DNA from: Pelomyxa schiedti
Lineage: Eukaryota; Protista; Evosea
DNA: 45,571 nucleotides
Reading direction: 5' to 3'
NCBI GenBank assembly: GCA_020536535.1
Contig: JAHLWZ010000925.1
Coordinates: 1-45,571 of the forward strand
Made by a program: the position numbers and the translations under genes
The notes under the pieces: generated by a model
What the model saw: the letters and a program-made list of their open reading frames with translations, nothing else
Told to the model about the DNA's origin: nothing
Database searches by the model: none
Shown: one piece after another, positions 12,448-36,900 of the stretch
Numbering within the stretch: position 1 is the first letter of the stretch
How the letters are laid out: each line of letters opens with the position of its first letter

Positions 12448-14741
12448 TCAGCTCTTTGTTTTGGTGTCATCTTTTTTGTGCTCTGCTTTCAGCTTAGTAG
12501 CCACCCATGGAACAAATTCCTCAGCTGTTAGGTGCGCCTTTGTCGCCTCAGATGTTACAGCAGTGATATCAAACACGCCTGTAAGGCAGCAGTTCCAACC
12601 ATAGATTGTTCCTCCAAGCTTGGTGGATAGTGACCGGGAGCAGAAGTAACATGACTGAAGGGCAGTCAATTGGCTGGAAAGGTCGGGGGTTGGCGGCCTG
12701 GCTAGATATGAGAAAAGGGATTCTGGGTGTACAGAAACCGTACTTGGTTGATAGTGTGGCTATCTCAGAGTCGATGGAAGCTATTTCCTTCTTAATTTTT
12801 TCTAGTTGTTCTTGCTTTGTTTCCAAATCTGGAAGGGATAAGTAATTGATTGTACAAACACCAATGCGCAACTGTGCTCCAGTGTGCTGATCTCTGCTTC
12901 TAGCTTGGTGCGACTGGGACTAGGGGCTGCTGATTGAAGTGAACAATAGTCGGATTAAAAGAGTAAGAATACGCTCAGACTTCTTGATACAGACAGTGCC
13001 GCCTCCTTCCTCTTCATTATCACCTTCAGCTGGTTCTTCAGCTGTCCCATTTATCAACGCCATCATTTCCTGAAGGGGTTACTCCTGGAATCATTTGAAT
13101 GTACACACATCAACACTTCGCACTGTTTGTGGTTCTGGTGGAGTATCTGGTTTTACAACCATTGTAGAGGAAGGGGATAGCTGAGGTTCCTCCTCATCTG
13201 GACCACTGGAAGTCTTAGAGGAGTCATTTTCGACAACAAATAGGGAGAAAGGTACATTTTGAGTGTTGGGTACTTGGGTTCCTGTTTGAATTGACTGAGA
13301 TCCAGTTCGTGCTACTGTGGATTCCATTCCCAAAGCTTTTTCTCGGCCCTCTCGTTGTATTGTATCGTCGTACTCTTGGACAAGTTCGAGTAGACATGCG
13401 TTGTCTAATGTTCCCTGCAAAAATGGCTCCTGGAAAATCCTACATAAGCGAGGGGATTGAGGTCTTTCTTTACTTGGAGTAAGGCCTGTGCACTAGGCCG
13501 CTCTTTGGGATTCTTAATCAAGCAATTTTTTATAAAGTCGTTGAAGGAATCACTCCATTTTTTTGGATCTTCCAGTGTAGGAGATGGTAGATTTGGAATT
13601 AAGAAAATTACCTGTTTACTTTTTTTAAAAACAAATCTGAAGTTTCATAAACATACACGCATTGGATGGATTGCGGAGTGTGGTGGGGAACCCTGTGCAA
13701 GTTCAATAGCAGTGATTCCTAAAGACCAAATATCAATCTGCACTGAAACACATAAGACAAGGAAAGGGGCTTTAGACAACAAAAGGGGTGATTGCCTTTT
13801 CAGTATAGCCACTTTCTTGTATAACCTGAATGAAATATGATTATTGAGTAGTGGAATAAAGTACTACCTCTGGAGCCATCCAAAACGGAGTCCTAGAAAG
13901 TTTTCGGTTATTCATTTGTCATTTAAATGTTGTGTGTACCCAATCACAGAGTTCATGCAGGATACGGTACTACTTAACTGTGCGGACACACCAAAATCCG
14001 CTGTATTCAAAGTTAAAAGAAATTGGTATGTTATTGTTCCTATACCGAGTTTTGCTTGACCTTTGGCAGTCAACAATATATTTCCCGCCTAAGGTTATTG
14101 CATAAACTAAACTGTACAATTCTCGTTGTTGAAACCTTAATATCACGATGTACTTTCCGCAAACTGTGCAGATAATCTAAACCCTTAGTTCGTCAGTTAC
14201 GCTATTTTTTGATGTGGAAAAAGCCTACAGAAAGAACATCTTTCATAACGCAAGCTATCTGTTTTTCGTTAAATGTTCTCTTCAAAACTTTGAGAATGTC
14301 AGAGCAAGACCCCGCTGTGCACAGCTCCATTATAATCTGAAATTTATGAGTGGCTTGCTTTGGTCGTTACTAGAAATACCCAGAGCTCATTGAGAGCATT
14401 GAGGTAACTACCATAGTACGCTATAGTGTTGGGGTGCTTGATTTGTTTCATAAAGTTGACTTCCTTCCGTATGTCAGACAGATCTCCCTCGATTTTGATG
14501 ATCTTGATCGCAAAAAATGCACCGGTTTTCTTATGCATGCCCTTCCACACAGCACCATATGATCTATTTATTGCCACAGGGCCAAAAAAAAACGAAAGCA
14601 TAAGGTCCGCAGCGCCGGGGAATTAATTTGTCACATCGACTCAAGTGGCGTGTCAACGTACCCTTCGCCTAGTTTTTCGACAAGAGAAAAGTCAGGTGTC
14701 GGGTCCTTAAACAAATCCGGAAGAGAACGACCCGTGGCCAT
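12448..14741 (-). CDS. STE20-family MST/Krs (Hippo-like, GCK-II/III) kinase with C-terminal coiled coil
   Basis: The spliced product reads [35 protein letters not shown]...FAIKII...HRDIKAGNILL...[11 protein letters not shown]...[63 protein letters not shown]. The last-exon frame (stop 12448 versus 12569) depends on the choice of acceptor. Confidence 0.9.
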
Positions 14742-14872: not shown

Positions 14873-17338
14873 TCAGACTCTCTCTTCTTGGCCCTGAGGT
14901 GCTCCACTTACCTCGGCTGGGGGTTTAATTTTTTGTTTTTGGAAGGCCGCCGGTGCTTTGAATGTCACGTAGCACAGTCCACCGCCAACGCCAAACAAAG
15001 CGCCCATAATGCCACCAAAGGATGTTGTCTTGCTTGTAAGGCTCACTGCCACTTTGTTGAATTCGCCCATCATGCTGCCGCCACCAAGCTCATAAGTGGC
15101 ATAGAGACAAAATAGAAATATACACACCACAGTGTAGTTGGGGATGCCAATCTCAGCAGATGAGCCGTGCACAGGCAAAGTACAACAGAGCAAATGCAAT
15201 TGCCCACAAAGCAAAGCTGGAGAACGTCAAACCCGTGAATGGTGCTATGGCATTCAACATTAGAATCCATAGCACTACAAACGAGACGTTTGGCCAAACC
15301 TCTCCAATGAACTTTGCATGGCTCCACAGAAAAGCAACAGAGTAAAGAGTATGAGGGCAGAGAAAAGATTCACGATGAACGTGCAACTCCAAAGTGATGG
15401 GTTCTTAACTATGATGTGCTTGTATAATAGCTGTTGCCTGAGTCAGGACTTTCCTTTTCAGAGAGGGTGGATGGATACAATATAAGCTGACGTGAGGACA
15501 GTATTAAGAACAATCCAGATGAATGAATGGAAGTCAGAGGTTCCAGGGGAGTTCATATTGAAGAAGAAACAAGAGAGTGTCTGTTGGAATGTGACCTGTG
15601 CAAAAAAACGAGCAAGAAAAACAAACCATGAAGAGGAAACTCGAGAAAACGTTTCCGGTCAAAGGGAACCGAAAAATCCGCCAGTCACCAAGAGCGGTGA
15701 CGATTGACGACACTGACTTCCAGAGGAAAATTGTTGTCGCTGGAAGGTCTCGGAAACTATGTCATTGGTTTTAAGCTAACATTGAAGGAGAGAGAAGTGA
15801 ACCTCAGGAAGTTGGACACAATCATCCCGACAAAAATTAGACTGCAGGGGACACATTCCAGAAGAACCCATTTCTGTACTCTGAATTCCAGTGCCTTGGC
15901 CAGGAAAAATAGTCCCAGAAATACAGAAGTCATGAGAACCTGCCCACGATAAACTTGTTGGCAAAAAAGAGGATGTATATAACCTGGGAAAATCCAAGAA
16001 AGAGAATATAGGTATCGGGAACTGCACTCTGGAAAAAAGGGAGCAAAAATACCCGGTTCAAAGTGCTCATTATAAGTGAGAGTGCAGTGTATAAAATGCT
16101 CATGATCACAAGGTGCAAATTTGTGCTGTCCTGGCACAATGTATTGGATTGTAGACTGTTTCGCCGCCGAATAAATATTGCCAGGGCACATGACACTGCA
16201 AGAAATCCCAGAAACAGGAGGCAAGTAGATATCCTTGTGATTATTTCGGCCTCTTCTTGGTGGCACTTGAACAAGTTGTTCATGACTGATGTGAAGTCGA
16301 TCCACGACATGTCGTAATGATGGATGGCTGCCGGGTTGGGGTTTCCGGTGAACACGCCACAATAATCAAGTGGATTGAACATATCTGTTGGGAATGTGCA
16401 AACTGCATTGAAATGTGCAAGTGTATGCCGGGAGACAAAATTTGGACCGAAAGTGTCAAGAACCTTCTCGTGATAAGTGAATGAATTCCTATTGGTGGTG
16501 AAAGTGTTGGTGAAGTCATCAATCATTGCTCCAACAACAGGACTCCGAGTGGCCGAAAACATGAAGAAGTTGGAGACAACCTTAGTCTTTCTCACTGTGC
16601 CAAACGAAGGCGGCGTACACCACTCAGAGCCGTTTATTATCCTCGGGAGAAACGAATCCAGAGGTATGAGCAGTTCGTAATCCAAATCCGCATATATACC
16701 CCCATATGCATAAAGTATCAGAAGGCGAGCTGCATCGGCTCTCATAATCGTGGTGTCAATTGAGATATACAGGCCATGCAGTTCCGGAAACACACGGAAT
16801 ATCATCTCTTCCAAGCTACCTCCGTCCCACAGCAAGTACACCCAATCTGCTCAAGCAATCAGCGTGAATGGAAACTCAACGGGAAAAATAAAGAAATACC
16901 TGGGTTGAGATCTTTCCAAGTCTGTACATAAGGAAGCAATCTTGGCGGGATACTTATTGAACTGTCCTTCTGAATACTGAGTTGATGGATGATTCGCGGA
17001 ACCCCGAGACGGCCGCCGTCTCCTCGTGCTCCTCGGGATTCGCCCACTTGTTCCGGAACCCAGCACGACGCAATGGAGGACAAGTTCGCGGCAGGTGCGG
17101 ATGCATTATGGGCCGGCGTTGCCGCCCAAAGTCCCGACAGGGCGCGGCCTTGCGCCACCTGGTTGTCCAGCACCTGCACGCGTTCCTCACCAGCCAAAGA
17201 TGCCATCTTTGTGGGCAACAGAAAACCGTCGGACAAGGACGGCGTAGTGGGCCCCAGCTGAATCGCTCTGGTGGACAGGAGGACTAGAAGCAGCAAACAG
17301 ACGCGGCGCCCCGCCGCTTCCACCCAATCGCCGGACAT
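14873..17338 (-). CDS. GT32 (DxD, SUR1/CSG1/Och1-like) glycosyltransferase fused to a Vrg4/GONST-like nucleotide-sugar transporter, copy 1
   Basis: Signal peptide, then VPRIIHQ, TWKDLNPDWVYLLWD, MRADAARLLILYAYGGIYADLD, FGPNFVS, AIHHYDMSW, a TM helix plus RRR, then transporter helices (YTALSLIMSTLNR; IFVGMIVSN; TTIFLWKSVSSIVTALGDWRIF; SPTTLCMMGEFNKVAV; GALFGVGGGLCY). The GT and the first transporter helices share one exon (ORF 15930-16841). Confidence 0.85.
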
Positions 17339-17786
17339 TGATTTTGGGGGTGATTCTTGGTTCTGTGGAACTTCGAAAAATTCCATTTCCAGGCACCCGG
17401 GGAGGGCAAACCTGTTTTCTGTCGTGGAACTCATCAAGTTCATTCGATCAATTCTCTGACCTCGAAAGATTGCGAGCGCTGGGGCCTTAATCTGCCAATC
17501 TAATCTCCTCTTGTACCCTTCTCTTTGTTGAGTGCAAGTGGTTGAACCCTTGCTGTTCCCAATGTTGCCGGACATCAATATTTGGCTGAATAAAAAAAAC
17601 ACCAGACCGCCGATCCTGAGCGACGATAACGAAAAGTACAGCGTTCCGGTCTGTTGATTATTTTATTCAGCCAATTCCCAACGGGATGTGTGACTCCGGC
17701 ATGACCATTTCAAGCCCCGAAGAATCAAGAAAACTTTACAAACAAAAACTCCAACAACCCAAGTAGGAGGAGCTATATTGACATAT

Positions 17787-20177
17787 TCACACCACGTTGT
17801 CTTTTGACTTCCCCACCGCGATGGCCTGTTGTGACTTGTTTGTCTGGAATAGAACGTAGAATAGTCCCCCAACAATTCCAAACAAAGCCCCCATCAGTCC
17901 CCCAAAAGACACCACAGCTTTGGAGAGGCTCACGGCTACTTTATTGACCTCACCCATCATACTACAAATGCTCAGTCAAGAAGGAAAGGGGTGAAGACAT
18001 ACCACACAGTAGTTGGTGACGTCAGGTGCAACAGATAGACAGTGCACAGGCAAAGTAAAACAGCAATGATGCAGTTCCCAATAAAGCACAAGTGCAGGAG
18101 ATTAAAACCGTCAATGGTACTGTGCATAAACTATCAACTCCGATTAACAGCGAGAGTGCCAAACCTTTTCACTGAGCTGAGAAAAGTGCCGAAACCAGTC
18201 AGCATAACCAAGAGCACTACGGCCGAGAAAAGATTCACAATGAATGTGCAAGTCCAAATTGAGGAACTCTTCTCAATAACATGCTTGTACGAGAGCTGTT
18301 GCAGTGAGACATGACTCAAGAAAAGATGCAATTACTGTATAAACAGACGTGAGGACAGTATTGAGCACAATCCATATAAACGGATCCCAGTCAGGAGTTT
18401 CAGTGGAGTTCATGTTGAAGAAAAAACAAGACAGAGTCTGCCAGCCAAGGGTTAGCTCAAAACACATACTTGGAAAACAAACCATGAAGAGGAAACTGGA
18501 AAAAATACCCCTAGTCAAAGGAAACCGGAATATCAACCAGTCACCAAGAGCAGTGATGATTGATGACAATGACTTCCAGAGGAAAATCGTTGTAGCTGGA
18601 AGGAATCGGAAACTATTCATCAACTAAGAAAGTTAAAGAGGGCGAGTAAACAAACCTCAGGAAGTTGGACACAATCATCCCGACGAAAATCAGACTGCAA
18701 GGGACACATTCCAGAAGAGCCCACTTTTCAATTTTAAAATCCAGAGCCTTGGTCAGGAAAAATAGTCCCAGAAATGCTGAAGTCGTCAGAACCTGCCCCA
18801 CAATCAATTTTGTATCCAAAGAAAGAGGGATGGCGAACCTGCGAAAATGCAAGAAACAATATATACGTCTCGGGGACTGCATTCTGGAAATAGGGAAGTA
18901 AAAACAGTCGGTTCAAAGTGCACATAAGCAGCGAGATTGCAGTGTATGCAATGCTCAAGGCGACTACATTAAAAGCTGAGAAACCCTGAGCAGGGGCGGT
19001 GAGTGTTTTGGATCGCTGCTGGCTACGGCGCCGAAAAATGAAAGCCAGAACAAGTGATCCCACAACAAACAGAAGGAACAGGAGGTACGTGCAAACTTGG
19101 GTGATGGTTTCGGCCTCGTCTTGGTGGCACTTGAACAAGTTGTTCATCAGGGAGGTGAAGTCGATCCACGACATGGCATAATGGTGGATGGCTGCTGGGT
19201 TGGGGTTTCCAGTGAACACGCCACAATAATCAAGTGGATTGAACATGTCTGTTGGGAATGTGCAAATTGCGTCCTGGTGAGCTGATGCATGCCGGGAGAC
19301 AAATTTGGGGCCGAAAGTGTCAAGAACCTTCTCGTGATAAGTGAATGAATTCCTGTTGGTTGTGAAAGTGTTGGTGAAGTCATCAATCATTGCTCCAACA
19401 ACAGGACTCCGAGTGGCCGAAAACATGAAGAAGTTGGAAATAACGGTGGTTTGTACTGCACCAAATGAAGCTGGCACATTTGATTCAGTGTGGTTACTCT
19501 TTCTTGGGAGGAATGAGTCCAGGGGCACAAGCAATTCGTAATCCAAATCCGCATATATCCCGCCGTATGCGTAAAGCAGAAGGAGGCGAACGGCATCGGC
19601 TCTCATGATAGTTGTTTCAATGGACAGGTACAAGTTATGCAGTTCAGGATACACTCGGAAGACCATTTCCTCCAAACTGTCTCCGTCCCACAGCAAGTAC
19701 AACCAATCTTGTTTGGATGAATATAAGTGAAAATCACGCAAGTGCGTGGTGGAAGATACCTGGATTGAGGTCTTTCCAAGTCTGAACGTAAGGAAGCAAT
19801 CTCGGCGGGATACTACTTGCAGAGGACTTCTGGATGTTGAGTTGGTGAATAATTCGTGGAATTGTGAGCTCTCCCGCCGCTCTTTTCGCGTCGCCGCGAA
19901 GCCAACACGACGCAGAAGAAGACGAGTTTGCGCCATTGGTCTCGCGCAGTGAGCCCTCCCAGAGATGCGAAATGGCCCTTCCCCCAGCAACCTCCCCGTC
20001 CAGCTGCCGCAAGCGCGTTTCTCCAATGACAGAGGCCATCTTTTCCGGCAGCAAAAACCCATCGGCCAGCGATGGCGAGGAGGGTGCCATTTTCACGGCG
20101 CCCGCTTGCCCTTGCCACCGCGCGACACACAGCAACACCCACCACGTCGCAGATACGTATACAACAAAGCTTGGCAT
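17787..20177 (-). CDS. GT32 glycosyltransferase-nucleotide-sugar transporter fusion, tandem copy 2
   Basis: Paralog of copy 1 with matching intron positions. Motifs: IPRIIHQ, RADAVRLLLLYAYGGIYADLD, HHYAMSW, YTAISLLMCTLNR, WKSLSSIITALGDWLIF, MMGEVNKVAV. Stop TGA at 17789-17787. Confidence 0.85.
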
Positions 20178-20351: not shown

Positions 20352-23300
20352 ATGACATGGAAACAAAACCCCAACCTTCAACTCCCACAACAGGCAAGTC
20401 AACAACAGAGATCTGCAGCCTGTCGCGGAAACCCGGGAAACACAAACCTCGTGTATAAGTGGGTGAACTCCTGTATCTAGCAGTATACAACCACACACCT
20501 CTCGAGGACTGCCGTCTCCTCCAGTTCCTCAGACCAAACCTCAATTCTGAACGCGGACCAGCATTCGCATAAAAAGTCGTGTGATGGAACTCGACTCGCA
20601 AGAATCTTATCCGTTTCTTCAGGAAAAAACACCAACAAGCAAAAACTGGGTGCCGCACGCAGTCGCGAGGACAACAGGGCCGCCGGCGGTGAGGCTAGCA
20701 ATGTCCCACCGGTGGCCCAGCCCGGCGTGCGCATAGTCCTGCAGTCCACTGGGGCGACGTCATTCCCCGGCGAGGCGGAATTGGGCATCCCTGCCCGGCG
20801 CGCCAAGATCCAAAGCATTTCGGTGGGGGGAAATCTCATTTCGGAAATCCCGCCTTACGTCGGTGCGCTGCCGGCCCTGTCGGATCTAGATGTCAGCCAC
20901 AACAGGATCTCGTACTTTCCGGCTGATACTGTTGTCGCGCGTGCCGCTACTCTGAGGCACCTATACATCTCTGGCAACAACATTCGCGAGATCCCTCGTG
21001 ATGCGGTCTCCGCACTGGTAAACTTGATGACACTGAGATCTGCATTAAATCCGCTCGGAGAGGGCACGGGTGGTTTTCCTACTCACTTATTTGCACTTCC
21101 GTCTATTTTGACACTGGATTTGTCCCGCACTGGATTGAAGGGTGACTGCGGATTAATTGAACTGCACCGCCCGACTTTTCCAGCTTCTGCTATGACGGGC
21201 GCCGTTGTTAGTGCCCCTAAACCTGCCACAAACGAGCCCAATATAAATGCCCCCACCACACAAACAAGTGTACCAACTCCCTCACCTCAGACAACTCCCA
21301 CATGCGACGTTGTAGGCACTTGCCACTTGAATGGCCTTATCTTGGATCATAACAAACTGCGAAGTCTCCCAGATAACATTGGCAAAATTCATGAGCTTCA
21401 CACCCTCCAAGCATCTTTCAACCACCTCAGATCCATACCAGACAGCTTATGTTCACTCACAAAATTAGATACACTCATTCTGTCCGAGAACCGACTCTCT
21501 ACTCGTATATGTCCCCTTTTTAAGTTTCCTTTTCATTCACCAGTACCAGTTCCTGACGATCTCCCATTGTTACCTTACCTGACAACTCTTGACATTTCAA
21601 ACAATCCAATTACAGCATTCCCTCCCAGATGGTTTACAAATGGAAATGGGGGGCCCCGTAACAATACATGGTTATCTTTAATGGAGCTGAGTGCCCATGA
21701 CATGCTGCTTGAAGAGCTTCCAGTCAACTTCTTTTCCCACCTGCCCTGTCTTTCAACGTGCAATCTATCTAGAAACAATCTCGTGAACCTACCTGATTTT
21801 ACTCATGCTACATCTCTAGTTTGCCTTTACGTTGTGTGTAAAACACAACAGTTTTGTTTTCCCTTACACTAGGTTTAGAGTAACAACCAGTTAACCAGTT
21901 TCCCTGCCTCTTTTACATCTCTAATCAGGCTAGAGCATTTAGATATTTCTTGTAATAGTATAGTGCACTGTCCCTCTCTTGCAAGTGCGATATCTTCCTT
22001 ACCACATTAGTTCCTTACAACAAAAAAGCATTGACTAGACTCTGCAACTTCTCTGCTGGATACAACCCCTTTATGGAAACCCCTGATTTGCCCCCTGGAT
22101 TGGCAGAGTTGAATCTATCTGGATGTATTTTAACAAAACCGCCAACTGGTAGTTTTCTTTCACTTAGGAAACTGTATTTGTGTATGCCAATACCCTTAGT
22201 TTGTTATTGCACTACAATTTCCTTATTGTTTGATAGCTCTGAACGAATTTACCCGTATTCCGGCTGAATTAGTTTCCTCCACACAGCTGGGCACTGTAGA
22301 TGTTTCGTTCAATAAACTAGACTCTCTTCCAATTTTTCATGCAGGTATTTTTCCCACTCTTCATATTGAGTTGAAGTTGAACTAGATTACGTCAACGCCA
22401 ATAGAAACAGCGAAACAATTCAAAGAACAGTTCCTCTCCCTTCCAATAAGATAGCCCCGCCTTGCGTTAATATGCATGTTGGAATTGCAGAAACTTTGGG
22501 TCGTAGGCTGTCCATGGTAAGGCTGGTTCGAATGGAAAATGAACTCCATTGATTTCAGTTAGGAAGATGTTATCTGCTACCAGGGACAAATTTCACCGGG
22601 CGCCGATTTTATAGGTCTTTTTGATGGACACGGCGGAAAAGAAGTAGCCGATTTCGTTTCATCTGTTCTCCCAGGTGCTGACCCAAAACATTTTCGATAC
22701 CACATTCACCATTTCAAACAAAGGCTACTTCAAGGGTGTTCTTCCCGCAAATGAAGAAGAAGTCTGCAAAACTGGCTATCAGCAGACCCAAGTTAAGTGC
22801 AGAGAATACTTAGGTGAAGATGCCGACGAAAAGGTAAATTAACAAAAATAAGGGAAAGTTCTAACTTGTGTTGAAAAGCAAATTGGATCAACTTCGCTTA
22901 CTGCTCTTGTGTGGCGTGATCATATTTTTATGGCGAATGCAGGGGATTCGCGGGCAATTTTGTGGCGGAAGGATCACGCAATACGGCTATCCAGGGATCA
23001 CAAGCCCCTTGATCCCGAGGAGTATAAACGAATCAGACAGCTAGGAGGTAGGAATTATCTTCGTAGTCCTTCCTCCTAAACTTTCTTCCATGAAGGATAT
23101 GTAACAGAAGTTGGGCGTGTGAATGGGATCATTGCTGTCTCTCGGTCTTTTGGTGATTTCTTTGTACACCCGCTTCTAGATCCTGAACCCTACTTCACCA
23201 CAACTCAATTTAGTGAGGAAGACAGATTTTTACTTTTGGCATGCGATGGTGTTTGGGATGTTCTCACTGACGAGAAGGCCGGCACAATTGTAAATCTTGC

Positions 23301-32022: not shown

Positions 32023-33650
32023 ATGGACTGCGAAGCCAGCACGGCGACGTCTACCACGTCCACCTCCGTGCCGCAGACCGCGTCGCAGCCATCACCCACA
32101 CAAGTTGTCAGCACCGCTGCACAGCAGGAGCAGAAACAGACCCCGCAGTGCCCCTGCGTCACCTGCGCGTGCGCGTGCCACAGGCACAACCACTGGGCGG
32201 CCCCAGGGTGCGACGCAGCCACGGACACGGACGACCTGCCCGCCGACGAGGACGAGGACGAGTACGAGGGAGACGGCGCGGACACCGAGCAGGAGCAGCA
32301 GCACGCCCGAGGAGGGGACGACTACGACGCCGGGCTGATGACGGCTACCACAACGACCACGTCCGGGCGAGGGTGCTGCGTCGGCTGTGGGGTCTTGGGT
32401 TGGCTCTCTTCCGCGCTTGGCGGGCTCTGGTCGCCGGACCCGCCACTTTCGACGGCAGCAGCTGCCCGCCACGGGATTATGGGCGACGGGCCTGCGGCTT
32501 CTTCTGCGGGTGCTTCTTCGCAGCAAATGCGCAAGAACCATAACAGGCCTCAGGCTGCCGTGAAGATGCAGGTGAGAAAACCGCCGGCCAACAAACCACG
32601 AAGGATGAACAAAGAAACTACCACGGCCAAGGCCCAGGTGGCGAATTCCGCGTCCGCTGCTGGGGATTATGGGAAGACCAGTGCCGGCGTGCCAACACGA
32701 GCAACGACCAAAGTGCCTGGGAGTGCGGCTGCTCTTGGCACTTCGGGGAAATCAGTTACAGGAAGTGGGGAGGTTGATTTGCTTAGGACGCTTCCGCGAT
32801 CTCCTGTTGTTCCGATCAAATACAGTGATTTGGTGGCAAAGTACGCTGGGGAGGAGGCGGACGAAACTTACATGATCCCTGTTATGGGAGACCTTCACGT
32901 CGGTGTGCATTTTAATGTACACACTACTATTGGGATGACTACCTATCTCAATCTCCCCAATAGGAAAGACAAGTTTTCTCCATTGGTGTGTTGCTCTTGC
33001 GGTTTTTGTTTTTCATAACTGGTGAATTCCCAGCGTTAAACATGGGAAAACTCCTCTTCTGGTGGACACAGAGCATGATGTTGAACAGACTGTTCCAGTT
33101 GTTGAATTTTATCATGGAAAGGTTTATTTTGCACAACGTAAAGGTTTCCTGACCCTTATTCCCTTGGCTTGTTCCAAAAGAAACTCAAATTGATGCTTAT
33201 CAAACGTAGACACGACTGGTTCTTGAAAATTCCAGCAAGGAGGTTTCTTTTCTCTTTTTTTTTTTTTCCTCCTTCTTCTATCTCACTGCACACCGTCATA
33301 TGCAGCGTTTTTGGAATTGCACACAGTTTCTTGATTATTTTTGACATTACACACCGCCAGTCCTGGGATCACGCAAAGAGTGTTATTGAGGATATAAGAA
33401 AATACCACAAGAACCCCATGGTACCTTGGGTTTTGTTAGCAAATAAGACAGACCTGGAAGAGCAAAGGGCAGTCCCAAAGACGGAGGTTTAATACCTCTT
33501 TTTTGTGCCAAAATTAACAGCTGTCCCAAGATTGAAGAATTCATGCTACCAAATAAACAGGGAGCACTCATTGAGAGCAGCAAATACGATTTACAACAAA
33601 CAAAGAACACCCTTCAGTTGTTGCTTAGCCAAGTCGCTCGCCAGTCTTGA
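32023..33650 (+). CDS. Divergent Ras/Rab-like GTPase domain with long low-complexity, Cys-rich N-terminal extension
   Basis: Splicing gives IPVMGDLHVGKTSFL (G1), KLKLMLIKRRHD (where DTAGQ is expected), FLIIFDITHRQSW, VLLANKTDLEEQRAV (G4) and IESSK (G5-like). It ends VARQS* with no CaaX/CC. Confidence 0.75.
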
Positions 33651-33987
33651 ATTTGTTCAATAAGCGTTACCCTGTCTATTTTTATTTTTTTCTTCATTCA
33701 TTGGTTGGCCTTCAACCAATCATCGATCATGGAACTGTTCCTCCTGCCGCTAATTCACAGAATTTTTTTTGATTTACTGTACGCCGTACTTACAGTGAGG
33801 TGCCCCACCTTACTCCTACAACCCAGCTCTCTGCACTTTTCTTCTTCAAGTGGTCGCCTGTGCACCAGCAAGATTCCATTCAGCTCTTCGTTCCCCAAAA
33901 GCCGTAGAAAACGATGCAGAGAAAGAAAAAAAACAAAAAAAAATAAAATTGGCGTTCATAGTGGCGGCACCGCCAGTGGGTGCACAT

Positions 33988-36900
33988 ATGATGACGACAC
34001 AGCAACGCCGGACAAGCGACGTTGGGACGAGACCGTCGGGGCTGGCCTTGGCGATGCAGCAGCAGCAGTCGGTGGTTGGAATCGATTACGAACTTTCTGT
34101 GATGGAGCACACGGACAGACCCAAATCCGACGACGACACTTTAATATTAATAAACAACAACAACACAACCACCACCATCATCAACGACACTGCGAACGAC
34201 GCCCTGAACGGTGCCGCCTCGCAACAAAATCAACAACAGCAACAACAAAAGCAACCACAATCGCAACCGCAACCCCAACCCCAACAGCAACAACCACAAC
34301 CACAACAACAGCAACAGTATGTGCCACAGCACCAGCACCAACGTCAAAGAAGTGGCATGGATGGTCCGTATTCACAAGCACAAAATGTGGCTGCTGTAGA
34401 GGACGGCGGGGCAACGGCTGGGCTGTTGCCTGCGGCAAATGGCGAGGGCAACAGCTCCCCGTCGGTAAACAACGGCCGCGCCACCAGTGGTTCAATTGGT
34501 GCCACTGGCACTGCAAATCAGAGCGGCACTCACGGTGCTTTGGGCGCGACTAATAATTCGATTCATTCCTCGTTTACTGTCCGGACTTCCACTCAATCAC
34601 AAAACTCTTCACCTAATTTAACCTCGTCACCTCAGCCTTCGACACCACTTCCGGGCACTTTAGCTCTCAGCACTCCACTTACATATACAACACTCTCTAA
34701 CAGCATGTCCATGACTAATTTACGTGATTCACCTTCACTGAAACGAGCCGAATCAAACTTAAGATCGTCGCTAATTATCCGCAGCTCATCACCTTCTGCC
34801 AACACATCTTCACCCATGGCATCCCAATTGCTGTTTGTATGTCAAAGGTGCAAACAGACTTTGGAAATTGAAGAAAGCTTGGGGAAAATAGATGTTGGTC
34901 TATTGAAAGAGGGTGGTGAGTTGTCATGTCATTTCATTTTCCAAAGTTCTCACCCCTCCTAGAAAGAAATGTACAACTACTATCTTCCTCTCAGAGGCCA
35001 GCAAATGTATGGATAAAATCAGAAACAACACCCAGAAGACGCAGTAGTGTTTTGCTGTTGCCAGGTACTACTATAGATTCAAGCTATTTCCCTGAAATAA
35101 AAATAAGTAGTCAGCAAAATCAGTTCTTCACCTATGGGCATTTCAGGTTTATCTGACTCTGACCTGACTAACTCGTTTATTGCACCCTCTTGCCACAGAA
35201 GATCAGGTACAACAAATGTCAAACGTATTTTGTTCCTCAAGGTTTTTTTAGTGTTAATGTCAGGTGAGGAGCTCAGCCAATTATCTGAAGCAATTTCAAA
35301 AAACTCCTTTATTCAGCAACAAACTTCAATACCACCAATACCACAACCCCAGCAGCAAGCGAGCCTATCACAAAGCACAAACAAACTTCCAGAACTGACG
35401 GAACCCCCAAAAGCCCTCCAACCATTACCATCTCAGGTACCCCTAATGCCACAACCACCACAATCGTCAGTTGACACCACACCCGACCAATCAGGTCATG
35501 GAGCTGCACCACATCTCGTATCCAACACAAAGGTGAGACCTTTGTACTTGCACTATTTTTGGGTTTTCACAACCTCAGGAAGATAAACTCAACGATGACC
35601 AATGTGAACCAGCCAATACTGCTCCCAATTCCACTGGTACTTTAAATTCCACACCTTCGACATACTCTCCAGTGGTAGCTGCCCCTTCAGCACCCCGTTC
35701 TCCTTCACCTGGCAGTCCTATGCAAAATACCCAAAGTTTGCGCTACTATCTCGCATTATCTGAGTTATTCACTTCATCATCGGAAATTTCATGTAACAAC
35801 TTCCTGCTCACTTTTTGGGAGTTCACTTTAAACAAAGGGATTGATCAACCTCTATGTTCCAATTGTGCACATATTTTGATTGCGGAACTTGAGGACCTTA
35901 GTGCAGAAAGGGAAACACAAGTAAGAACGCTCGACGAATCACACCTGACAGTGTACAGAAAAGTGTATTTTGTCACTATATTCAAAGTTTGGACGATTCT
36001 GGCGATGTCCAGTTGCAATTAACTGACACAATTGACAAGGAGCTCGCTAGGGTAGGTGATTTATATTTCTGTAATAACCCTGAAAAAGTTGGAAGCTGAA
36101 GAAATGCAACTGGAACAGGAATTATGTCTTCTAGAACAAACTTCCCAGTCCAACATTACGGAAATGCAATACCTCTCAAGACAATGCAGAAAATTGAATT
36201 ATTATGAGAGAAGGTCTACCAACATGTTGTTCCAAAATGGATGCCCATATTTAACCCCAGGTACTGGGAGTTGTTTGATGAGCACCATCGAGATTCGGCA
36301 CAGTTCACGGAGCTGTGGGGTGACACCCGTACTGCCCTCTCTACATCGAAGGATAAACTTGCATTTCTCAACAGGTAGACGTATTTACAACGTTGCAATG
36401 TTGTAAATTGCTCTAGTTGCAATCCTTTGAACGAGGCCTTCAATATTTGGTTTGAAGGCCATTTTGTCACAGTTAATGACTTCCGTCTTGGCCGACTCCC
36501 AAGTCAACAAGTATTCCTTTCGGCCTGTACTTAATTTACTAACCTTATGAAGCTCAAAGTGGAATGGGCTGAGAACAATGCTGCATGGGGTTACGCCTCA
36601 CTGCTCATCGTCAACATGGCAAGATTACTCAACTACGATTTTAAAGGGTACCCAAAACTTGTACCTCCACATACCCATTATTATGACTTCAGGTATCGGC
36701 TGACCCCTCTAGGCTGCAGTTCCCGTGTAGAAAAGTTAGACTCACACATTACATACGAATTGTAGGACTCTCCCCGAATTTAACTTGCCAGTACCAACTT
36801 TTCAACCAAGATTTGGAGACCCAAATGTCAGTATAGGGAGGTTATTTTGGTATAGGCGCTTTGATAACGCTGTTGCTGGATTTGTTTGTTGTGTCAAAGA

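What the first reader, a model, noticed from the sequence alone, without database searches (positions are those of the whole stretch)
14873..20177. Single-chain 'transport-and-transfer' glycosylation enzyme: GT32 transferase fused to a nucleotide-sugar transporter, present as a tandem pair
Seen in sequence: both paralogs encode a signal peptide, a GT32 catalytic domain (PRIIHQ, RAD..R...LY.YGGIYADLD, HHY..SW), one TM helix ending in RRR, and a DMT-fold transporter resembling the GDP-mannose transporters Vrg4/GONST. The GT-transporter junction lies inside one uninterrupted exon in both copies (ORFs 15930-16841 and 18734-20062), so it is not a gene-model merge. Established knowledge: Golgi nucleotide-sugar transporters have cytosolic N-termini and GT32 enzymes (SUR1/CSG1, CSH1, Och1) act in the lumen using GDP-Man. 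The extra TM with a basic cytosolic flank is exactly the linker needed to put the GT in the lumen. Inference: the protein imports its own sugar donor and channels it to the attached transferase, perhaps for mannosyl-IPC-type glycolipid or surface glycan synthesis. It may also be a Rosetta-stone counterpart of the yeast Csg1-Csg2 complex, in which a GT32 needs a polytopic membrane partner. I know of no characterised protein with this architecture.
Basis: partly seen in the sequence, partly recalled or inferred. Interest (0 to 1): 0.85.

Follow-up and report, generated by a model that had tools for sequence, protein, structure and literature searches.

The report
Sugar-adding enzyme fused to sugar importer
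An anaerobic amoeba (Pelomyxa schiedti) has five genes, two of them side by side here, that each make one protein joining a sugar-attaching enzyme to a changed copy of its own Golgi importer of activated sugar, a natural test case for whether such importers hand sugar directly to their enzymes.

Summary
The fusion is real. The window is a Pelomyxa schiedti contig with two tandem 8-exon genes (692 and 706 aa). Each encodes a GT32 domain, one membrane helix with a basic tail, and a complete 10-helix nucleotide-sugar-transporter fold (TM-score about 0.8 to Vrg4). The junction is inside exon 2. Five intact copies exist, and both halves are under purifying selection (dN/dS 0.14-0.29). All six introns of the transporter half match those of the amoeba's stand-alone GDP-mannose transporter gene, so that half is a duplicate of it. 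The linker helix was inherited from a GT32 subfamily that already has a C-terminal anchor. RNA supports separate transcript ends, refuting NCBI's merged 1279-aa model; RNA over the junction is only partial. Transport is not shown: Vrg4 Y28, S32, K118, N221 and K289 are kept, but N220, Y281 and A286 are changed in all copies. Best reading: a transporter supplying its tethered enzyme (0.5); rival: a transport-dead Csg2-like scaffold (0.25). No such fusion turned up outside this species or in the papers searched. The scan reported this family twice before on other contigs of this genome.

The parts
17787..20177 (-). Copy B, 692 aa, 8 exons: 20177-19760, 19707-18839, 18792-18656, 18612-18483, 18437-18336, 18295-18165, 18119-18003, 17961-17787
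   Evidence: introns 3-7 and the 3' end to about 17751 seen in RNA contigs
14873..17338 (-). Copy A, 706 aa, 8 exons: 17338-16900, 16846-15984, 15939-15803, 15756-15627, 15580-15479, 15430-15300, 15244-15128, 15074-14873; start codon inferred from homology
   Evidence: introns 4-7 seen in RNA contigs
19860..20177 (-). Copy B N-terminal hydrophobic segment (signal peptide or anchor) and stem with an N-x-S sequon found at about the same place in all five copies
   Evidence: hydropathy; sequons
19165..19859 (-). Copy B GT32 catalytic domain (PRIIHQ, RAD, YGGIYADLD DxD motif, HHY..SW), split by intron 1
   Evidence: PF04488; Och1 structure 9n3s E 4.8e-9
18960..19164 (-). Copy B linker: TM helix, RRR basic flank and short cytosolic loop, in the same exon as the end of the GT and the first transporter helix
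   Evidence: same TM plus basic tail in stand-alone GT32 relatives
17787..18959 (-). Copy B 10-TM SLC35/DMT-fold transporter half derived from the resident GDP-mannose transporter gene; GEVNK in place of GALNK at 17954
   Evidence: (paralogs)
16301..16999 (-). Copy A GT32 catalytic domain
   Evidence: PF04488
16105..16300 (-). Copy A linker TM helix, RRR flank and loop
14873..16104 (-). Copy A transporter half; GEFNK at 15067

Best explanation
Each gene makes one secretory-pathway (Golgi-type) membrane protein. Shown: a GT32 domain, one TM helix with basic residues after it, and a full 10-TM nucleotide-sugar-transporter fold, in five intact paralogs under purifying selection; the transporter half is a duplicate of the amoeba's GDP-mannose transporter gene. 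Inferred from family knowledge: the N-terminal hydrophobic segment puts the GT in the lumen, the helix returns the chain to the cytosol, and the transporter then has the normal cytosolic N-terminus. The gene most likely arose when a C-terminally anchored GT32 lost its stop codon and read into the duplicated transporter; the transporter then evolved fast and the fused gene multiplied. Most likely function (inferred): the transporter half still imports a nucleotide sugar, probably a GDP-sugar such as GDP-mannose, and the tethered GT uses it for an alpha-linked transfer onto a membrane-near acceptor such as an inositol sphingolipid or surface glycan. The tether fixes 1:1 co-localisation. Strict hand-over is possible but not implied.
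For: Fold. Ancestry: 6 of 6 intron columns and phases shared with P0023 and 4 of 4 with P0163; the nearest stand-alone transporter among 1.84 billion representatives is P0023; trees place the fusion clade with the two Pelomyxa free transporters (SH 0.999 and SH-aLRT 99). Selection: transporter dN/dS 0.20 and 0.29, GT 0.15 and 0.14 in the two least saturated pairs. Vrg4 Y28, S32, N39, K118, N221, G285, N288 and K289 equivalents are invariant in all five; S32, K118, K289 and Y28 are essential and N221 selects guanine (PMC13342644, PMC6789118). Closest solved GT is the mannosyltransferase Och1. The genome has a GDA1-type nucleoside diphosphatase candidate and four SMS/IPCS-type genes.
Against: Only 18 of 35 columns highly conserved in 53 free relatives are kept in all fusions. 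Y281 is L or V (Y281A is inactive and the residue must be bulky, PMC6789118); A286 is E or Q (A286D is a defective yeast allele, PMC13342644); N220 is I or V. The stem branch is very long (2.5-3.9 changes per site). The cell still has two free GDP-mannose transporter genes, so the fusion is not needed for bulk supply. GT32 enzymes also use UDP-Gal and UDP-GlcNAc (own knowledge), so the donor is not fixed by family. No single RNA contig spans GT motif to transporter helix 1.
Confidence: 0.5

Rival explanations
1. The transporter half no longer transports. It is a Csg2-like membrane partner that folds, stabilises, localises or dimerises the GT32 or presents its lipid acceptor, and may still bind a nucleotide as a regulator; the free transporters supply GDP-mannose.
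For: Y281, A286, L287, N220 and the proline after the motif are changed in all copies; long stem branch; yeast GT32s Csg1 and Csh1 depend on Csg2 (PMC9635301), a DMT-fold protein (PMC4570203); no CSG2 match in this genome (a weak negative because the control did not ring); two free transporters remain.
Against: The polar and charged cavity residues Y28, S32, N39, K118, N221, N288 and K289 are invariant across copies only about 50% identical in this half; a pure scaffold would not need buried lysines.
Confidence: 0.25
2. The transporter half is active but has switched specificity: another nucleotide sugar, or a different counter-substrate such as GDP instead of GMP, possibly serving the whole compartment and not only its own GT.
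For: The changes cluster in the sugar motif (GALNK to G[EQ][FV]NK) and at Y281, which in Vrg4 matters selectively for GMP (Y281F lowers GMP affinity only, PMC6789118), while the hinge lysines stay.
Against: N221, the guanine discriminator, is kept; no substrate was tested; sequence predicts SLC35 substrates poorly (PMC6789118).
Confidence: 0.22
3. The fusion is an assembly or gene-model artefact, or two adjacent genes without a shared transcript.
For: NCBI's own model here is a wrong merge (P0007, 1279 aa); RNA over the junction consists of two short contigs from different runs inside one exon, so DNA carry-over is not excluded.
Against: Five loci on four contigs keep one open frame across the junction despite 25-31% linker identity between distant copies; DNA contigs 14 and 18 of run X4 cover both junctions; there is no stop, intron or new start between the halves.
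Confidence: 0.03

Closest known systems
Vrg4 / GDP-mannose:GMP antiporter family (SLC35D-like; TC 2.A.7.13)
   Same: 10-TM DMT fold, TM-score 0.79-0.80; Y28, S32, K118, N221, G285, N288, K289; direct descent from the resident family member (shared introns).
   Different: Fused behind a luminal enzyme; FYNN is [FL][IV][IV]N, GALNK is G[EQ][FV]NK, Y281 is L or V; about 20% identity; not recognised by Pfam TPT.
Yeast Csg1(Sur1)/Csh1-Csg2 MIPC synthase complexes
   Same: A GT32 (PF04488) paired with a DMT-fold membrane protein.
   Different: Non-covalent in yeast; Csg2 is its own family (PF16965) described as a regulatory subunit or calcium-homeostasis protein, whereas this partner derives from a GDP-mannose transporter. 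The GT here is from another GT32 subfamily; the amoeba has a separate Sur1-like gene.
Och1 alpha-1,6-mannosyltransferase (GT32, PDB 9n3s)
   Same: Nearest solved GT structure by sequence (E 4.8e-9); RAD..R and YGG.Y.D.D motifs.
   Different: Och1 is a single-pass type II protein with no C-terminal anchor or transporter (own knowledge); similarity covers about 90 residues only.
Mammalian MGAT-SLC35A enzyme/transporter assemblies (PMC6453868)
   Same: Transporter and transferase held together, with direct donor transfer proposed.
   Different: Non-covalent, UDP-sugar systems; hand-over is stated there as an unproven hypothesis.
Uncharacterised stand-alone GT32 subfamily (P0008, P0011, P0019, P0020, P0033, P0038)
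   Same: Signal segment, stem, GT32, cysteine pattern, HHY..W, then TM helix and basic tail; about 28-34% identity.
   Different: They stop after the basic tail; no transporter follows.

Membership tests
GT32 / PF04488 | Gly_transf_sug profile over cut-off | tested here: met
   39.7-54.9 bits against cut-off 23
GT32 / PF04488 | Intact DxD and RAD..R motifs | tested here: met
   invariant in all five copies
GT32 / PF04488 | Alpha-glycosyl transfer, donor and acceptor | not testable with these tools
   needs enzyme assay
SLC35/DMT nucleotide-sugar transporters | 10-TM DMT fold | tested here: met
   model of paralog P0002, pLDDT 90.8; Foldseek E 1.8e-9 to 5oge. The alignment used for folding held 53 free transporters, so the model leans towards that fold; the sequence hit is independent of it
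SLC35/DMT nucleotide-sugar transporters | Pfam TPT/UAA/Nuc_sug_transp/EamA over cut-off | tested here: not met
   only EamA 15.7 bits (cut-off 28.2) for one paralog
Vrg4-type GDP-mannose transporters | Descent from a family member | tested here: met
   6 of 6 shared introns, best hit, trees
Vrg4-type GDP-mannose transporters | GALNK / GXLNK motif | tested here: not met
   GEFNK, GEVNK, GQFNK x3
Vrg4-type GDP-mannose transporters | (F/Y)YNN motif | tested here: not met
   N221 kept, N220 is I or V
Vrg4-type GDP-mannose transporters | Essential Y28, S32, K118, K289; aromatic Y281 | tested here: inconclusive
   first four invariant; Y281 is L or V
Vrg4-type GDP-mannose transporters | GDP-mannose/GMP exchange | not testable with these tools
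   needs proteoliposome assay
Csg2 family (PF16965) | CSG2 profile match | tested here: not met
   no match in the proteins or the genome (control silent)
MIPC synthases Sur1/Csh1 | Orthology and IPC mannosylation | not tested
   no tree with named Sur1; a different, Sur1-like stand-alone gene exists at C725 (judged by eye)

The most novel reading that the evidence does not exclude
The protein is a self-contained import-and-transfer unit: the transporter half hands a GDP-sugar preferentially to its own GT domain and takes the released GDP straight back out, the altered nucleotide pocket having dropped the GMP step. It would be a natural single-chain example of donor channelling in the secretory pathway.
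Probability: 0.15. Interest if true: 0.88.

Novelty: new variant of a known kind. Interest (0 to 1): 0.68.

Why it matters
Direct hand-over of nucleotide sugars from Golgi transporters to transferases has been proposed from interaction data but is stated as unproven because the complexes are hard to isolate or disrupt (PMC6453868). A natural 1:1 chain can be purified as one protein and tested by split-versus-fused and isotope-dilution assays. If the transporter is dead instead, it shows a GDP-mannose transporter turning into a Csg2-like partner of a GT32, which bears on what Csg2 does. The gene's history is unusually clear (six shared introns, inherited anchor), and databases hide it: one record merges two genes and none names the transporter half.

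Tried and rejected
Single-sequence folding of the full-length paralog failed (pLDDT 38), so domain geometry was not assessed. A word-based search with the transporter half alone found nothing. A metagenome scan found no relative. Contig look-ups for P0001 and P0002 were withheld. Paper searches for a natural GT-transporter fusion found none; the library lacks most subscription journals. NCBI's 1279-aa double protein was rejected because RNA contigs run unspliced through copy B's stop. The 15756-18656 RNA joint was rejected as a 23-nt cross-match between paralogs. My first guess for intron 6 of copy B was wrong and was corrected by RNA. Pfam TM_ErbB1 and TcdA_TcdB hits are below cut-off and reflect a TM-plus-basic segment and the shared DxD motif. 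Four Pfam calls failed on a frame slip and one tree script returned nothing.
Full report
Source and gene structure. The window is contig C925 of a 52-Mb eukaryotic assembly. A database protein encoded on a 45,571-bp contig matches it and is named Pelomyxa schiedti KAH3744351.1 (P0007). Three-frame reading and splicing in scripts give two head-to-tail minus-strand genes of eight exons each, with 40-55-nt GT-AG introns: copy B (20177-17787, 692 aa) and copy A (17338-14873, 706 aa), 69.5% identical. Searches used exons by reference or the database's own proteins (P0001, P0002, P0007). The joined models were used only inside scripts, for alignments, trees, dN/dS and one local tblastn against six fetched loci.

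RNA evidence (three runs of one sample, contigs only). Spliced joints confirm introns 3-7 of B and 4-7 of A. Two contigs run unspliced from 17961 to about 17751, through B's stop codon and across the place where NCBI's model splices B into A, so the 1279-aa protein is a wrong merge. At the junction of B, one contig covers 19418-19005 (GT end, linker helix, RRR) and another 19036-18849 (RRR to transporter helix 1). They overlap by 32 nt, come from different runs and lie within one exon, so they are consistent with one transcript but do not prove it. The GT half of A has no RNA cover; introns 1 and 2 rest on homology.

The two halves. Exon 2 of both copies matches PF04488 over cut-off, and the nearest solved structure is Och1. 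No Pfam transporter profile passes. However, the C-terminal half of paralog P0001 finds only the two Vrg4 structures in the PDB (E 6.3e-7 and 2e-4), and a model of that half of P0002 (pLDDT 90.8) superposes on Vrg4 with TM about 0.8 (Atlas best row an SLC35D-type cluster at 0.88). The folding alignment was mostly free transporters, so the model is not fully independent of that assignment.

A family, not just a pair. Three more intact copies lie on C1457, C831 and C1045, plus two short fragments. All five share the same seven introns. In the two least saturated pairs dN/dS is 0.15 and 0.14 for the GT, 0.20 and 0.29 for the transporter, so both halves are maintained. The linker is only 25-31% identical between distant copies yet always open, which excludes a gene-model accident.

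Origin. The best stand-alone transporter hit among 1.84 billion representatives is the amoeba's own GDP-mannose transporter KAH3757062.1 (P0023). Its six introns fall in the same alignment columns and phases as the six in the transporter half (shown for four copies; the fifth has the same phases and flanks). Two trees join the fusion clade with the two free Pelomyxa transporters, apart from a probable Mastigamoeba orthologue (P0157, species inferred from its gene id); the stem is very long, so placement alone is not secure, but the introns agree with it. The nearest stand-alone GT32 proteins have the same plan up to the linker: signal segment, stem, GT32, HHY..W, a cysteine, a TM helix and a basic tail. 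The simplest history is a C-terminally anchored GT32 reading through into a duplicated transporter gene, which gives the right topology without new parts. I did not find a free copy of that GT subfamily in this genome; the stand-alone GT32 at C725 is of another type.

Topology (inferred). A hydrophobic N-terminus, an N-x-S sequon in the stem of all five copies, four invariant cysteines in stem and GT, and basic residues right after the linker helix fit GT in the lumen, then cytosol, then ten transporter helices.

Is the transporter active? Mapping through P0023 to Vrg4: Y28, S32, N39, K118, N221, G285, N288 and K289 are invariant in all five; K40 is R; N220 is I or V; Y281 is L or V; A286 is E (window copies) or Q; L287 is F or V. 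Of 35 columns at least 85% conserved in 53 free relatives (start Met left out), 18 are kept in all fusions. In Vrg4, Y28, S32, K118 and K289 are essential, N221 selects guanine, Y281 must be bulky, and A286D is a defective allele (PMC6789118, PMC13342644). The core is therefore kept while the pocket is remodelled. This fits continued transport, possibly with changed selectivity, but a binding-only scaffold is not excluded. The genome has a GDA1-type diphosphatase candidate and four SMS/IPCS-type genes, so neither GMP antiport nor an inositol-sphingolipid acceptor is ruled out; neither is shown.

Distribution and prior knowledge. In the exhaustive search the only proteins with both halves among the best 150 were Pelomyxa's; a very distant fusion scoring under about 69 bits would be missed. 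A metagenome scan was blank. The Atlas lists 790-900 aa fungal Nuc_sug_transp clusters and DUF3431 clusters as weak look-alikes (0.78-0.82). These could be analogous fusions or transporters with long tails; I could not open them, so the claim that no analogue exists is not secure. Paper searches found non-covalent transporter-transferase assemblies (PMC6453868) and no natural fusion. Two earlier reports of this scan describe the same family from other contigs; I saw them after forming my reading and do not count them as support.

Verdict. A real, lineage-restricted, five-copy fusion of known parts in an arrangement for which I found no description. It works most likely as a transporter feeding a tethered GT32 (0.5), less likely as a GT with a dead-transporter scaffold (0.25) or a transporter of altered specificity (0.22). 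It is a GT32 member and a DMT-fold protein of Vrg4 descent, but fails the GALNK and FYNN motif tests, so it should not be filed as a GDP-mannose transporter without an assay. Interest 0.68.

Noticed in passing
window 17582-17674: A 93-bp MITE-like element with 28-nt terminal inverted repeats sits between the two genes; 418 candidate places in the genome, the best 40 at 93-100% identity.
   Followed up: partly
window 14873-20177: NCBI record KAH3744351.1 merges the two genes into one 1279-aa protein and names only the glycosyltransferase; RNA contradicts the merge.
   Followed up: yes
L030:1020-2260 (G000:C725): Stand-alone Sur1-like GT32 with N- and C-terminal hydrophobic segments.
   Followed up: partly
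L029 (G000:C821, about 32550-34000): Second free GDP-mannose transporter gene; its database protein (P0163, 295 aa) looks truncated, since similarity to P0023 continues to the last helices.
   Followed up: partly
L008 and L012 (G000:C2794, C4163): Short contigs close to the C831 and C1457 copies: alleles or a sixth copy.
   Followed up: no
ESM Atlas: Fungal clusters of 790-900 aa with Nuc_sug_transp, and of 650-800 aa with DUF3431, score as weak look-alikes; possible independent enzyme-transporter fusions.
   Followed up: no
window 14344-14601 (-) and 20712-21872 (+): Flanking genes look like a STE20-type protein kinase exon and a leucine-rich-repeat protein (by eye); no glycosylation cluster is evident next to the pair.
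   Followed up: no
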